Assembly (NCBI RefSeq): GCF_032191835.1
Contig: NC_083224.1
Location: 190,960,001-191,024,000, forward strand
DNA: 64,000 nucleotides
Direction: 5' to 3'
Source: Heteronotia binoei
Lineage: Eukaryota
Both the position numbers and the translations under genes were made by a program. Below the pieces are notes generated by a model. The model was not told the origin of the DNA and searched no databases. It worked only from the letters and a program-made list of their open reading frames with translations. Below, piece by piece: positions 4,101-10,100 of the stretch (the stretch's first letter is position 1; the number at the start of each line of letters is the position of its first letter).

Positions 4101-7100
4101 AGGTGCCCCTTGTAAGAACAAGCACAAAACTGGATCCGAATTGTTGGATTAGGAAGAATGAATAAAGTATTATTTAAAGATGAAATCCAAGCAGATTCAA
4201 ATTCAACGCTGTAAGTAGGAATGATATTTATTGGAATAACACTTGTGAAAAAGGAACGGCGCAGGGACTTCTCTTACATCATCCCCATTTTGGGTTTCTG
4301 CCTGTAGTGACCCGTTTCTTCATTCTTGCTGTGTTGTTAACATGGAGTCCTTAGAGGAGCTGTCACTCTGACCCCAGCCTGGGGGGGTGGGATTCTGGCT
4401 TGAGTCGCTGTCCTGTCGCCCTCCCACCTATCAGGGAGACCGATGCCTCCCCCCCCCCCGCACTGTGGGGGCCTGAAAGGGCACACAGCTGCCCCACTGA
4501 CATCCCCCACTCTTCCCCCCAAATATGGCCATCCATCTGCAGAGCCCCAGAAGGCAGGCAGGAATGAACGAGGGGCCCCTCTAGTCTCAGGGAGGCAGGG
4601 GGTGTGGGCATCAGCAGTAGAACCCGGGCGGGGGGTGTGTCAAAGCTCTGTGGGCCCTTTGGCTGGGTGGACTCACAGGTGGGGGCATGGCTGCTCCAGC
4701 CACAGTAGCCTCATGCTAGCAACCAGAGGCACCCCCAGTGGCCTGTCCCAGCAAGCTGAAGACCATATCCCTGCAAACAAAAAAAGAGATGGCATTCTTG
4801 GCTCAGTGGCAGAGCATCTGCTTGGTAAGCAAAAGGTCCCAGGTTCAATCCCTGGCATCTCCAACTCAAAAAGGTCCAGGCAAGCAGGCGTGAAAAACCT
4901 CCTCTTGAGACCCTGGAGAGCCGCTGCCAGTCTTAGACAATACTGACTAGAATGGACCCAGGGGTGTCTGATTCAGTAGAAAGCAGCTTCATAGGTTCAA
5001 TTTGTTTCTCTTTAGGGGAGGGACGGTGGCTCAGTGGTAGAGCAGAAGGTCCCAGGTTCAATCCCCGGCATCTCCAACTAAAAAGGGTCCAGGCAAGTAG
5101 GTGTGAAAAACCTCCGCTTGAGACCCTGGAGAGTTGCTGCCAGTCTGAGTAGACAAGACTGACTTTGAGGGACCCAGGGGGTCTGATTCAGTAGAAGGCC
5201 CAGGCAAGTAGGCAAGAAAAACCTCCGCTTGAGACCCTGGAGAGCTGCTGCCAGTCTGAGTAGACAAGACTGACTGTGAGGGACCCAGGAGGGTCTGACT
5301 GAGTAGAAGGCAGCTTCATATGTTCATCCAACTGCACACAGTGCAGTGTCAGCCAGGGAACCCACAACGACACCTTCCCCAAAGACAATCCCATCTCTGG
5401 GGAAGGAAGGCAAACCAGAGGTGTGGTCTGGATTCCAAGAAAGAGGCGGCTGGTCAGCAAGTGAAGCCCCCCCCCCTTGGCCCAGCAACAGCGAACGGGA
5501 TGGGTTCTCTGGCCCCTCGCCTGGCTGGGCATGCAGGGGGTGGGTGGGGAGGAGGCCTGCAACAAGAGGCCACTGGGCAGTCACAGGGTGCAGGGAAGCA
5601 AGGCCAGACAGGCGTGGGGCTGTGGAAACCCTTGCAAGGGGTACTCCCCCTCACAGACCTCCCCTCCTGGTGGAAGCCATATGCCACAAAGAGCTGGAGA
5701 ACCCCAGCCAGATGCACCTGGGAGAGGGTGTCACGCAATGGATTTCCAGAGCCTTGGGTGCAGAAGGTCCCAGGCCTTGGGTTTAGAGCAGAAACTGCAT
5801 GGCGGGCCAAACAAATTGCAGTCCCCTGGAGCAGATGCTGAGAAGGGGCTCCAAATGAAGGTGACTGGGGGAGGCATGGCGGAGGACGGCTATCACTGGC
5901 CTGCCGAGGTTCCACTCAGGTTCAAGGCCAGGGGAGCTGTTGGGGCCCTCTGGGACTGGCCGCGACTCCTGAGGTGCCAGGTGAGGAGAGCGCAACGCAG
6001 CCGTTTGTCTGTCTCCTGCACACGAGGAGGGTCCCTGCCTTGTCATGCCTTGGGAGCCCCCCCCTGCAGCTGTTCTGTGCAGGACGCTGAAACTGGGCTG
6101 CCCACAGGCCTGGCCGTGGGGGGGGGGGGGAGGCACAGGGAGGCAGGACAAAGCACTGGGAGGATGGATAAATGGCTCCAAAAGGGAGCGTGGTGGTGGA
6201 ACTGCGGAGCTTGAGCTCCTCAGGGCATCGTGGGGCTGGGGGGGGAACTGGATCTTTCTCCCCACAGCAGCCCTCCTTCCCTGACGGTAGCTCCTCTCTG
6301 GGCAGGTGGAAGATGAGCTGGTGGCTCTGCAGAAGAAGCTGAAAGGCACGGAGGACGAGCTGGACAAGTACTCGGAAGCCCTGAAAGATGCCCAGGAGAA
6401 ACTGGAGCAGGCGGAAATAAAGGCGACGGACGTGGGTGGCAGCTGGGGGAGGGGCTTCGGGCAGGGGGAGGGGCCTGGTGAGCTTCTTGGCGGGAGGGGG
6501 GGGGAGATGGGGCCAGGCCCTAAGTTTTCCTCCCAAGCCCAGTGACTCCAGACTGGGGCCGCGCCAGAGTTGCCCGGAAGAGGGAGTGGGGGGGGGGGAA
6601 GCAAATCCTCATCATTGCGGTGGTTTCTGCCTGGCAACCAAAGCACCATCCTATTGTGGGCCGTGCCTTGGTCTGCAGCCCCAAACCCAGGAACGCCCCA
6701 CTTCGCAGGGCCGCAGGAACGTGAACCCAGTTTCCTCTTCGCGGATCCTCCCGCTTTCTGCCTTAGAAGGCTCCGGATGCAACCTGGCCTGTGCCTGCCC
6801 AGAGGCCCAGCTGGCAGCAGAGAAGCCACCAGGCCCGGCTTCCAGGGCCCGCCCGACGTAGGCCTGGCGGGGGGGAGGCTGGAGCCCTCGACGTCCTTGG
6901 CGGCCGGGGCAGGAGTGCGGCGCGCAAAGGCGACTGCGGGGCTGCTTGTGGCGCAGGGCGAGGGTGCCCAGCCGGCCGGCCCTCCTGCCGGGCAGGCGGC
7001 TCCAGCGCTGGGGCTGTCAGAGCCCCGCCTCCCCTCCCCTTCCCGCCCTGCGGAGCCGGGCCACGTGCCGCCGGGCCCAGGCGAGGGGGGCGCCGCGATG

Positions 7101-10100
7101 GAGGGCTGGTGGTGGCTGCAGGCGGTGCAGCGGGAGGCCGGCGAGCGCCACCACGAGCGGGAGCTGCGCCAGAAAGGCAGGCGGGCCGCGGCGCTCTGCT
7201 TCTCCCTCCTTGACCTCCTCCTGTCTCTCTCTCCCTCTCTGGCCGTCGGGGGGCGCAGGCCGAAGGGGAGGTGGCGGCGCTGAACCGGCGCATCCAGCTG
7301 GTGGAGGAGGAGCTGGACCGCGCGCAGGAGCGCCTCGCCACCGCCCTGCAGAAGCTCGAGGAGGCCGAGAAGGCGGCGGACGAGAGCGAGAGGTGGGCGC
7401 CCCCGGCCTTGGCGGGGCGGGCGGAGGGGCGCAGGGAGCTGCCGGGCCCGGGCCGAGCCCACCCACTGGCCCTCTCCGCCGCTGCAGGGGCATGAAGGTG
7501 ATCGAGAACCGCGCCATGAAGGACGAGGAGAAGATGGAGATCCAGGAGATGCAGCTCAAGGAGGCCAAACACATCGCCGAGGAGGCCGACCGCAAATACG
7601 AGGAGGTGCCCGGCCGGCCTGGGGGGGGGGGGGGAGGAGAGCGAGCCAGCCAGCCCCGGGGGGGAGCCCTCCGGCCCGGGGAGAGTGACCAGGCCGCCCG
7701 CCGCTCTCCTTGCAGGTTGCCCGCAAGCTGGTCATTCTGGAGGGCGAGCTGGAGAGGGCAGAAGAGCGAGCGGAAGTCTCCGAGGCGTGAGTGCGGGGCT
7801 GGAGGGGGCAGGGCCTGGGTCCCTCTGCCCTTCCGGAACTGGGGGGGCAAAGCATCCCCCTGCCCTGCAGAAGAAGTCCCTCCGGGCCTCCCACAGCAGC
7901 TCCAGAACTGATTCCTGCCCAGCTGACCCACGGAGGGGTCTGTTGAGGGGCTCCGAGCACCACCTCCTGGGGCTGCAGTCCAAAGGGCTGCTGTAGCGCA
8001 TCAGGTCGCCCGAGGGAAGGCTGTTGACGGTGACAGGTGGCGTCCAGGATGCTCGCTGGGCTGAGCTGCCTGGGGGAGCGGCAGAGGCCTCTGCGCTCAG
8101 GGTCAGGGTAGGCCTGTGAAATGGCAACGGGGCACCGTCCTGACGGGACTCTCTCCTCCGGCCTTTGTCTCTGAGCAGGAAATGCAGCGACCTGGAAGAA
8201 GAGCTGAAGAACGTCACCAATAACCTGAAGTCTCTGGAAGCTCAATCTGAGAAGGTGGGTGGCTGCAGAGATCTTGCCACCACCCAGCGGAGCATTTGTG
8301 GCTTGCCCAAAAGGCCCAGGCAACTTCTGCCCTCTCCCCCCCCCCCCGGTAGCTGATGGGGAACCTTCCTGTCAGCTCTCCAGGCCAAGTCCAGATGTCC
8401 TTCCATGTCCAGCATCTGGTGGGTGCGTTGCTTTTCTGCGAGGGACTCTTGGCACTTTGTTCAGGGCCCAGGTCGGGTCCAAGCAGGGGTCAGGTAGCTT
8501 CATCTCATGTGGTTGTGGTGTCGTTCCAGTGCCATCTCACTGTGGCTGCAGAGCCCCACAGACAGTTTCCTCGCGCAACCACTATTTGATATGAAATAAA
8601 CGAGAGAGGGTTGTAAGCCATTGGGGAGAAAAGTTGGGTATAAAAGTTGGGAGACCCAGTTTGGTGCCGTGGTTAAGCGTACAGACTCTTATCTGAGAAA
8701 CCTGCGTTTGATTCCCCACTCCTCCACTTGCACCTGCTGGAATGGCCCTGGGTCAGCCATAGCTCTTGCAGAGTTGTCCTTGAAAGGGCAGCTTCTGGGA
8801 GAGCTCTCTCAGCCCCACCCACCTCACAGGGTATCTGTTGGGGTGGAGAAAGGGAAAGGAGATTGTGGGCCGCTCTGAGACTCTGTCCTTGAAAGGGCAG
8901 CTTCTGGGAGAGTCCTCTCAGCCCCACCCACCACACAGGGTGTCTGTTGTGGGAGAGGAAGGGAAAGGAGATTGTAGGTCGCTTTGAAACTCTGTCCTTG
9001 AAAGGGCAGCTTCTGGAAGAGCTCTCTCAGCCCCACCCGCCTCACAGAGTGTCTGTTGTGGGGGAAGAAGGGAAAGGAGATTGTAGGCCACTCTGAGACT
9101 CTGTCCTTGAAAGGGCAGCTTCTTGTAGAGCTCTCTCAGCCCCACCCACCTCACAGGGTGTCTGCTGTGCAGGAAGAAGGGAAAGATTATAGGCCACTGA
9201 GTCTCTCCTTGAAAGGGCAGGTGCTGCAAAAGTCCTCTCAGCCTCACCCGCCTCACAGGGTGTCTGTTGCGGGGGAGAAAGGGAAAGGAGTTTGTAGGCT
9301 GCTGTGAGACTGCCCTTGAAAGGGCAGCTTCTGGGAGAGCTCTCTCAGCCCCACCTGCCTCACAGGGTGTCTATTGTGGGGGAGGAAGGGAAAGGAGATT
9401 GTAGGCCGCTCTGAGACTCTGTCCTTGAAAGGGCAGCTGCTGTGAGAGCCCTCTCCAGCCCCACGCACCTCACAGGGTGTCTGTTGTGGGGGAGGAAGGG
9501 AAAGGAGATTGCAGGCCGCTCTGAGACCCCGTCCTTGAAAGGGCAGCCTCTTGGAAAGCTCTCTCAGCCCCACCCACCTCACAGGGTGTCTGTTGTCGGG
9601 GAGGAAGGGAAAGGAGATTGTAGGCCACTCTGAGACTCTGTCCTTGAAAGGGCAGCTTCTGGGAGAGCCCTCTCAACCCCCCTACCTCACAGGGTGTCTG
9701 TTGTGGGGGAGGAAGGGAAAGGAGATTGTGAGCCGCTCTGAGATTCGGAGTGGAGGGCGGGATATAAATCCAATATCATCAAATGAAGAGAATAAACAAG
9801 TAGGGCCTTTGTTCTTTCCCATTTACACAGAAACATAAAGAAGGATTCTGTCCTACCTTAAGCCATGAGTTCAGATACCCTAAAGGACAGATGCTTGTCC
9901 TTGTCAAGTCCGCAACAGTTCAATGATCAACAACAGTCCACTGCAAGAATGGCTGTTTATTGATACATGACGGATCAGAGCAAGATGGTCCTTGTGAAAA
10001 CTGGCTGTGGCGAGCAAATGCCCTCTACCTATAGTTCAGGACTAAACCTTTACCCATTCAAACCCAAGGCGTGAGCAAGCAATCCCTCCCCCAGTAGTTC

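What the first reader, a model, noticed from the sequence alone, without database searches (positions are those of the whole stretch)
7098..7266. TPM4 exon 1b appears broken: 18 codons short, three tryptophans, no GT donor
Seen: the only 1b-like sequence encodes [26 protein letters not shown] (26 aa) and is followed by GGCAGG; read-through into exon 3 is out of frame (83-nt intron). Known: exon 1b is 44 codons, starts the low-molecular-weight Tpm4.2 isoform that dominates in mammalian non-muscle cells and platelets, and tropomyosins essentially lack Trp. Inference: this lineage may have lost or re-engineered short Tpm4 while keeping 1a/2b, 9a and 9d. One speculative in-frame rescue is a GC donor at 7177 joined to the AG at 7264-7265, giving ...[13 protein letters not shown] CpG island still covers the region, so an internal promoter may persist.
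Basis: partly seen in the sequence, partly recalled or inferred. Interest (0 to 1): 0.7.

Follow-up and report, generated by a model that had tools for sequence, protein, structure and literature searches.

The report
Decayed TPM4 exon 1b in gecko
In this gecko genome, the alternative first exon that normally starts the short, non-muscle form of tropomyosin 4 is a shrunken relic with a destroyed splice signal, although a snake-like squamate, a second squamate-like contig, a quail and a fish-like contig keep it intact; so this gene probably makes only the long form, an ordinary kind of lineage-specific isoform loss that has not yet been checked with RNA.

Summary
An ATG at 7098 opens 26 codons with three Trp and is followed by GGCAGG instead of a GT donor, 83 nt before TPM4 exon 3 (7259-7392).

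It is a true relic of exon 1b, not a chance ORF. Window 7141-7176 matches the last 12 codons of the intact exon 1b of two other squamate contigs (31/36 nt; 0 of 1000 shuffles reach the score). In those contigs the donor reads GTGAGC.

A profile built from 30 vertebrate 1b exons gives intact exons outside the training set 66-92 bits. It gives the gecko peptide 3 bits and finds no other 1b anywhere in the 64 kb.

All other TPM4 exons (1a, 2b, 3-8, 9a, 9d) are intact with AG/GT borders, and RAB8A follows downstream.

None of the imaginable in-frame splice routes works well. The GC donor with a second AG, and the full 26-codon reading, put charged residues in the coiled-coil core. The weak GT at 7125 has the poorest donor match in the gene.

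Most likely the short Tpm4 (Tpm4.2 type) is lost here, much as mammals lack TPM2 exon 1b and rodents lost use of TPM4 exons 1a/2.

I found no reads of this species and no TPM4 locus from another gecko. Assembly error, residual promoter activity and the age of the loss therefore remain untested.

The parts
1158..1271 (+). TPM4 exon 1a (start of the long isoform), intact, donor CAG|GTGAGG
6306..6431 (+). TPM4 exon 2b, intact (41 of 42 residues match the quail protein P0020; one Lys-to-Ile change)
6800..7097 (+). CpG island upstream of the relic. It has a GC box at 7023-7033 and an E-box (CACGTG) at 7062-7067, 36 nt before the ATG; in quail the E-box is 34 nt before the 1b ATG. The two full CRE sites seen in quail are absent here. 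This may be a promoter remnant, but activity is untested
7098..7175 (+). Relic of exon 1b: 26 codons instead of 44-45, three Trp, and the conserved N-terminal motif (Ser, Leu/Ile, Glu/Asp, Ala-Val-Lys, Arg/Lys, Lys-Ile-Gln) is gone
7141..7176 (+). Best-preserved block: homologous to the last 12 codons of squamate exon 1b plus the first intron base (31/36 nt vs L007:1194-1229)
7176..7181 (+). Destroyed donor: GGCAGG where the other squamate contigs have GTGAGC and quail GTGAGA. A GC dinucleotide at 7177 gives only an out-of-phase (+1) candidate donor
7176..7258 (+). 83-nt spacer to exon 3 (the 1b-3 intron is 1.3-2.4 kb in the quail and squamate contigs and 7.4 kb in the fish-like contig). It carries the pyrimidine tract and the CAG acceptor that exon 2b also uses
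7259..7392 (+). TPM4 exon 3, all 44 whole codons identical to quail
7488..8254 (+). Exons 4 (7488-7605), 5 (7716-7786) and 6b (8179-8254), intact
10711..12386 (+). Exons 7 (10711-10773), 8 (10866-10935), 9a (about 11445-11530) and 9d (about 12304-12386), intact

Best explanation
The stretch 7098-7181 is a decayed, no longer usable remnant of TPM4 exon 1b. Compared with intact squamate exons, it has lost about 19 codons through one 33-nt deletion plus further loss at the 5' end. It has lost the invariant N-terminal residues that form the head-to-tail overlap of short tropomyosins. Its phase-0 GT donor has been turned into GG by point substitutions. The gene therefore most likely makes only the long, exon 1a/2b-initiated Tpm4 isoforms (with 9a or 9d ends) and no Tpm4.2-type short isoform. 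Shown: homology of the relic, the lesions, the intactness of all other exons, and the intactness of exon 1b in other squamate contigs and a bird. Inferred: that no functional short isoform is made; that short-isoform functions are covered by other TPM genes (a Gekko japonicus TPM2-like protein, P0035, has a full 1b); and that the loss arose within the gecko lineage.
For: The lesions are read directly. A profile of 30 vertebrate 1b exons scores intact exons outside its training set at 65.9 bits (L007), 70.1 bits (L010/L011) and 92.3 bits (L008/L009). It scores the gecko peptide at 3.4 bits (E=12) and finds no other 1b in six frames of the 64 kb. Window 7141-7176 aligns to the last 12 codons of exon 1b in L007, and 7141-7188 aligns to L010/L011: blastn E 1e-5 to 1e-6; local scores 47 and 52.5 against a shuffle maximum of 31, 0 of 1000. 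The donor is GTGAGC in L007 and L010 and GTGAGA in quail, against GGCAGG here, and the next intron bases (CGGGCCG) are still shared with L010. L007 is 80% identical over 982 nt, intron included, to L006, which comes from a viper run. In register with exon 3, the 26 residues put Gly, Trp, Val, Glu, Arg, Glu, Arg at the a/d positions, where quail has Ala, Leu, Val, Ile, Leu and so on. The only in-frame GT donor (7125) matches 4 of 9 consensus positions, below every real donor of this gene (5-8). The other exons are 76-100% identical to bird proteins and have AG/GT borders. No protein in two very large collections carries this N-terminus.
Against: No RNA or DNA reads of this species could be laid, so neither the assembly nor the absence of a spliced product is verified. 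The CpG island persists, and an E-box sits at the same distance from the ATG as in quail, so transcription may still start here. The 26 codons are still open, and under one of two equally good alignments all deletions are multiples of three. The last 36 nt are as similar to the snake-like exon (86%) as fully constrained exon 3 is (83%), which could mean recent loss or residual constraint. No other gecko could be compared.
Confidence: 0.7

Rival explanations
1. The exon is re-engineered but functional. Transcripts from the internal promoter would use either the GC donor at 7177 with the AG at 7264-7265 (in frame; 26 residues, then Gly-Glu-Val of exon 3), or the weak GT at 7125 (9 codons, in frame, exactly five heptads shorter). 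Either would give a novel short Tpm4 N-terminus.
For: Both routes are in frame. The GC donor matches 6 of 9 consensus positions, like several real donors of the gene. The 9-codon route keeps the heptad register, with Leu and Ala at core positions. The ORF is open and the CpG island persists.
Against: The GC-donor product puts Met, Trp, Gln, Gln, Gly, His, Glu, Gln at core positions, so it cannot continue the coiled coil. It also requires skipping the strong CAG acceptor for an AAG 7 nt further on. The GT at 7125 has the poorest donor match in the gene (4 of 9). The conserved overlap-forming residues of every 1b exon are gone. No protein with this N-terminus is on record.
Confidence: 0.1
2. Assembly artefact: the GC-rich exon was collapsed or mis-polished, and the real genome has a normal exon 1b.
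For: The region is 72-80% GC, which is hard to sequence. The exon is shorter than expected and the 1b-3 spacer is only 83 nt, against 1.3-2.4 kb in the quail and squamate contigs. No reads could be laid to check.
Against: A collapse cannot explain the many substitutions in what remains. Three of six donor positions are changed, and the N-terminal residues are replaced. There are no Ns in the gene; the only gap is at 17640-18051. No tandem repeat spans the exon. The neighbouring exons 3-5, in the same GC-rich stretch, are perfect.
Confidence: 0.08
3. The coding exon is dead but the internal promoter is alive. The CpG island would still fire and give non-coding, frameshifted or N-terminally truncated TPM4 transcripts, possibly with a regulatory role. 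This is compatible with loss of the short protein.
For: CpG observed/expected is 0.68-0.83 over about 800 nt. A GC box and an E-box lie in the same order as in quail, and the E-box is at nearly the same distance from the ATG. An out-of-phase GC donor is available.
Against: The island also covers exons 3-5 and may simply reflect the GC-rich coding cluster. The two CRE sites of the quail promoter are absent. The promoter similarity to quail is not significant against shuffles (40 of 500 reach it), and nothing upstream aligns to the snake-like contig.
Confidence: 0.3

Closest known systems
Canonical TPM4 exon 1b (start of Tpm4.2) in other vertebrates
   Same: It occupies the same place in the gene: after exon 2b, before exon 3, inside a CpG island. 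The last 12 codons are homologous and end in the TPM4-type Leu-Arg-x-Lys. RAB8A follows the gene in the window, and a Ras-family gene follows TPM4 in the quail and bird-like contigs.
   Different: It has 26 rather than 44-45 codons. There is no GT donor, the conserved N-terminal motif is missing, three Trp are present, and the heptad register is broken.
Mammalian TPM2, which has no exon 1b although chicken and zebrafish TPM2 do (PMC4426136)
   Same: A lineage-specific absence of the internal-promoter first exon in one TPM paralogue, with the long isoforms kept.
   Different: It is a different paralogue and a different lineage. Here a recognisable relic is still present.
[quoted passage not shown]
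   Same: It is the same gene, and one of its two alternative 5' ends is lost in one lineage.
   Different: It is the mirror image: rodents keep 1b and lose 1a/2, while this gecko keeps 1a/2b and loses 1b.

Membership tests
Tropomyosin exon 1b (short-isoform first exon) | Lies between exon 2b and exon 3, downstream of an internal CpG-rich promoter | tested here: met
   The ATG lies 666 nt after exon 2b (quail: 517 nt), inside a CpG island.
Tropomyosin exon 1b (short-isoform first exon) | Homology by descent to 1b exons of related species | tested here: met
   Window 7141-7176 against L007 and L010: 31/36 nt, 0 of 1000 shuffles reach the score, blastn E 1e-5 to 1e-6. Against quail alone the match was not significant.
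Tropomyosin exon 1b (short-isoform first exon) | About 44 codons with the conserved N-terminal motif, detectable by a family profile | tested here: not met
   26 codons; 3.4 bits, against 66-92 bits for intact exons outside the training set.
Tropomyosin exon 1b (short-isoform first exon) | Phase-0 GT donor directly after the last Lys/Gln codon | tested here: not met
   GGCAGG here, against GTGAGC or GTGAGA in the comparators.
Tropomyosin exon 1b (short-isoform first exon) | Hydrophobic a/d heptad positions continuous with exon 3 | tested here: not met
   The core positions hold Gly, Trp, Val, Glu, Arg, Glu, Arg.
Tropomyosin exon 1b (short-isoform first exon) | Transcribed and spliced to exon 3 | not testable with these tools
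   No run of this species was served; the contigs that could be laid belong to a paralogue of another organism.
TPM4 gene (orthologue) | Full exon set 1a, 2b, 3-8, 9a, 9d with TPM4-type residues, and RAB8A as downstream neighbour | tested here: met
   Exon-by-exon matches of 76-100% to P0020 and P0025; RAB8A exons at 15882-24359 on the + strand; Pfam Tropomyosin match on exon 3.

The most novel reading that the evidence does not exclude
The gecko still makes a short Tpm4 from the internal promoter, but with a new, Trp-bearing, non-coiled N-terminal piece (through the GC donor at 7177 and the AG at 7264-7265, or the GT at 7125). That would be a tropomyosin with a new kind of N-terminal end, and therefore altered head-to-tail polymerisation on actin.
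Probability: 0.06. Interest if true: 0.65.

Novelty: new member of a known kind. Interest (0 to 1): 0.35.

Why it matters
Tpm4.2, the exon 1b product, is the TPM4 isoform studied in mammalian platelet formation (PMC5330761) and in neuronal signalling and neurite outgrowth (PMC12559059). A vertebrate that has naturally dropped it while keeping the long isoforms would be a natural experiment on how far short tropomyosins from TPM1, TPM2 and TPM3 can replace each other. It would also complete a pattern in which different lineages discard different alternative 5' ends of TPM genes: mammals lack TPM2 exon 1b, and rodents lost TPM4 exons 1a/2. For genome annotation, it warns against forcing a short TPM4 model onto this locus.

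Tried and rejected
**Protein searches for the relic N-terminus**
- A word search, embedded in the 245-residue stop-free frame so that 135-429-residue proteins were eligible, found nothing.
- An exact look-up of the 61-residue read-through ORF found nothing on record.
- A full phmmer scan of 1.84 billion representatives gave one hit, P0241. It is a tandem-repeat metagenome protein whose 22 weak repeat matches (8/19 each) add up, so the hit is spurious.

**Reads**
- No run holds more than 6% of the sampled words.
- The contigs laid from those runs match only part of exon 4 and continue into a TPM1/TPM3-type exon 5. They are a paralogue of another organism and say nothing about this gecko.

**Quail as the only comparator**
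- DNA similarity of the relic was not significant: 22 of 500 shuffles and 4 of 42 GC-rich control windows reached the score.
- The global alignment was ambiguous. The homology became clear only with squamate contigs.

**Contigs L001-L003 (unknown taxon)**
- They have no 1b within 1.3-2.2 kb upstream of exon 3. I rejected them as evidence because neither their identity nor their 2b-3 distance is known.

**Other gecko TPM4 loci**
- None were reachable.

**Other points**
- A weak profile hit at 31910-32086 is an unrelated, possibly repeat-derived ORF.
I re-ran it without that peptide.
All exon checks were done exon by exon.
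Full report
**The observation**

The + strand of the window carries a compact TPM4 gene:
- exon 1a: 1158-1271
- exon 2b: 6306-6431
- exon 3: 7259-7392
- exon 4: 7488-7605
- exon 5: 7716-7786
- exon 6b: 8179-8254
- exon 7: 10711-10773
- exon 8: 10866-10935
- exon 9a: ends about 11530
- exon 9d: ends about 12386

All have AG/GT borders and are 76-100% identical, exon by exon, to a quail TPM4 model (P0020) and to a TPM4/RAB8A fusion model of unrecorded source (P0025, metaclust). 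RAB8A exons follow at 15882-24359, which is the expected neighbour of TPM4.

- The ATG is at 7098, followed by 26 sense codons, three of them consecutive TGG.
- The next bases are GGCAGG at 7176-7181.
- There is no GT between 7125 and 7223.
- A GC sits at 7177, and a second AG at 7264-7265.
- The spacer to exon 3 is 83 nt.
- A CpG island covers the region: GC 0.69-0.80 and CpG observed/expected 0.68-0.83 over 6800-7600.

The background statements also hold. Thirty vertebrate exon 1b peptides collected from the protein searches are all 44 residues long and contain one Trp in 1320 residues. The 255 residues of this gene's exons 1a-8 contain none.

**Is it really exon 1b?**

On its own the peptide is barely recognisable. 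Pfam finds nothing in it. A profile built from the 30 peptides gives it 3.4 bits (E=12 within the window's own six-frame space). The best profile hit in the whole 64 kb is exon 1a, whose N-terminus is related to that of 1b.

Position-specific scores of its first 13 and last 13 residues rank 10th and 8th of about 80,000 positions. That is suggestive, given that both lie in the right order and the right place.

DNA comparison with quail alone was not significant, and the alignment was ambiguous.

**Squamate comparators**

The decisive comparators came from ORFs predicted on public contigs that read through exon 3, followed by fetching those contigs:
- L006 comes from run SRR32478113. A paper identifies that run as a blunt-nosed viper, Macrovipera lebetinus.
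- L007 is 80% identical to L006 over 982 nt, intron included, so it is a squamate close to that snake.
- L007 carries a full exon 1b (L007:1094-1228, 45 codons, donor GTGAGC), 1.3 kb upstream of exon 3.
- L010 and L011 share the same derived residues and carry a full exon (L010:40-180, donor GTGAGC), 2.4 kb upstream of exon 3.
- A fish-like pair, L008 and L009, and the quail locus (L004:5526-5657, donor GTGAGA) are also intact.

These exons were not in the profile's training set, except the quail one. They score 66-92 bits.

Against these squamates the relic is unmistakable:
- Window 7141-7176 matches the last 12 codons plus the first intron base of L007 at 31 of 36 nt.
- Window 7141-7188 matches L010 and L011 into the intron.
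- The blastn E-values are 1e-5 to 1e-6.
- The local alignment scores are 47 and 52.5, against a maximum of 31 in 1000 dinucleotide shuffles.

**The lesions**

1. The donor GTGAGC has become GGCAGG. Three of six positions are changed, including the T of GT, while the next intron bases are still shared with L010.
2. About 33 nt are missing from the middle of the exon.
3. The 5' part is rearranged. Two alignments are about equally good (57 or 55 identical bases of 78, counted by hand).
   - In the first, the ATG is the original one, and one codon plus one heptad (7 codons) are deleted.
   - In the second, the first eight codons with the original ATG are gone, and the present ATG arose from the Leu codon of the Leu-Glu-Ala-Val motif.
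   - Either way, the invariant Lys/Arg-rich motif after Ala-Val is lost.
4. In register with exon 3, the a/d core positions hold Gly, Trp, Val, Glu, Arg, Glu, Arg, where quail has Ala, Leu, Val, Ile, Leu and so on.

**Could it still be used?**

I listed every ATG-to-donor combination in the 2b-3 interval that would join exon 3 in frame.
- For the 7098 ATG, the only GT option is at 7125 (GCG|GTGCAG). It matches 4 of 9 consensus positions, below every real donor of this gene (5-8). It would give a 9-residue start, exactly five heptads shorter than normal.
It needs the AAG at 7264-7265 instead of the strong CAG seven bases earlier.
- That AG comes from the Glu-Gly codons at the start of exon 3, which all 11 compared loci (L001-L011) also have.
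- The product of the GC-donor route has no hydrophobic core.

I rate a functional re-engineered exon at about 0.1.

**Assembly error**

I could not test this directly. No run of this species is served, and the best share of sampled words was 0.06. The contigs laid from those runs are a TPM1/TPM3-type paralogue of another organism: they continue after exon 4 into a sequence encoding the TPM1/TPM3-type exon 5.

Indirectly, the evidence is against an artefact:
- A collapse cannot create the dense substitutions in what remains.
- There is no gap in the gene.
- No tandem repeat spans the exon.
- The adjacent exons 3-5, in the same GC-rich DNA, are perfect.

I rate an artefact at about 0.08.

**Most likely mechanism**

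The gene has lost its short-isoform first exon and now yields only products initiated at exons 1a/2b.

The last 36 nt of the relic are as similar to the snake-like exon (86%) as constrained exon 3 is (83%), while the promoter and introns do not align at all between the two. The exon was therefore probably under selection for most of the time since geckos split from other squamates, and the loss is probably not ancient. This is an inference.

Whether the CpG island still fires is open. An E-box lies 36 nt before the ATG, as in quail (34 nt), and a GC box lies upstream in the same order. But the two CRE sites of the quail promoter are missing, and the similarity is not significant against shuffles.

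Compensation by other TPM genes is plausible. A Gekko japonicus protein named tropomyosin beta chain-like (P0035) starts with a full 1b exon, and bird TPM2 has one too.

**Comparison with what is known**

Lineage-specific loss of one alternative 5' end of a TPM gene is documented. The TPM2 genes of mouse, rat and human contain no exon 1b, although chicken and zebrafish TPM2 do (PMC4426136). [quoted passage not shown] This case is the mirror image of the rodent one, in the same gene. I found no paper describing it in a reptile, but I ran no literature search aimed specifically at reptile TPM4. I file it as a new member of a known kind.

**Limits**

- The organism was not tested here. Earlier notes of this scan say the genome matches Heteronotia binoei.
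- No other gecko TPM4 locus could be reached, so the age and spread of the loss are unknown.
- The canonical TPM4 proteins did not appear among the hits of the protein searches.
- I did not build or search a joined spliced model. Exons were handled one by one, by reference.

Noticed in passing
window 7620-7636: A run of about 15 G lies roughly 15 nt downstream of exon 4, whose donor (GAG|GTGCCC) is the weakest in the gene (5 of 9 consensus positions). L003 has a similar G run just after its exon 4, and L010/L011 have G runs that match this one. It may be a conserved intronic G-run splicing enhancer.
   Followed up: partly
window 15882-24359 (+), gap 17640-18051: RAB8A exons follow TPM4, as in other vertebrates. 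The window's only run of N (412 bases) lies in a RAB8A intron, between the exons ending at 16107 and starting at 18198.
   Followed up: partly
window 12306-12386 versus 11447-11530: Exon 9d, the C-terminal exon of both Tpm4.1 and Tpm4.2 (PMC4426136), is the least conserved TPM4 exon here: 76% identity to P0025, ending Gly-Ser-Ile where P0025 has Leu-Asn-Glu-Leu-Asn before its fusion junction. The muscle-type exon 9a is 100% identical to quail. This might reflect relaxed constraint once the short isoform was lost.
   Followed up: no
window 6306-6431: Exon 2b has Ile where the quail protein P0020 and P0025 have Lys, in the Ala-Glu-Lys-Lys-Ala-Thr-Asp motif near its end.
   Followed up: no
window 31910-32086 (+): A short ORF whose start weakly resembles a tropomyosin N-terminus (second-best N-terminal profile score in the window). 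It looks like part of an interspersed repeat and is unrelated to TPM4.
   Followed up: partly
L001:1341-1980, L002:2221-2860, L003:1325-1962: Three contigs of unknown taxon (runs SRR31175806, SRR31175836, SRR31175812) carry a TPM4-like gene. Introns 3, 4 and 5 are very short (about 70-80 nt), and there is no exon 1b or 2b within 1.3-2.2 kb upstream of exon 3.
   Followed up: partly
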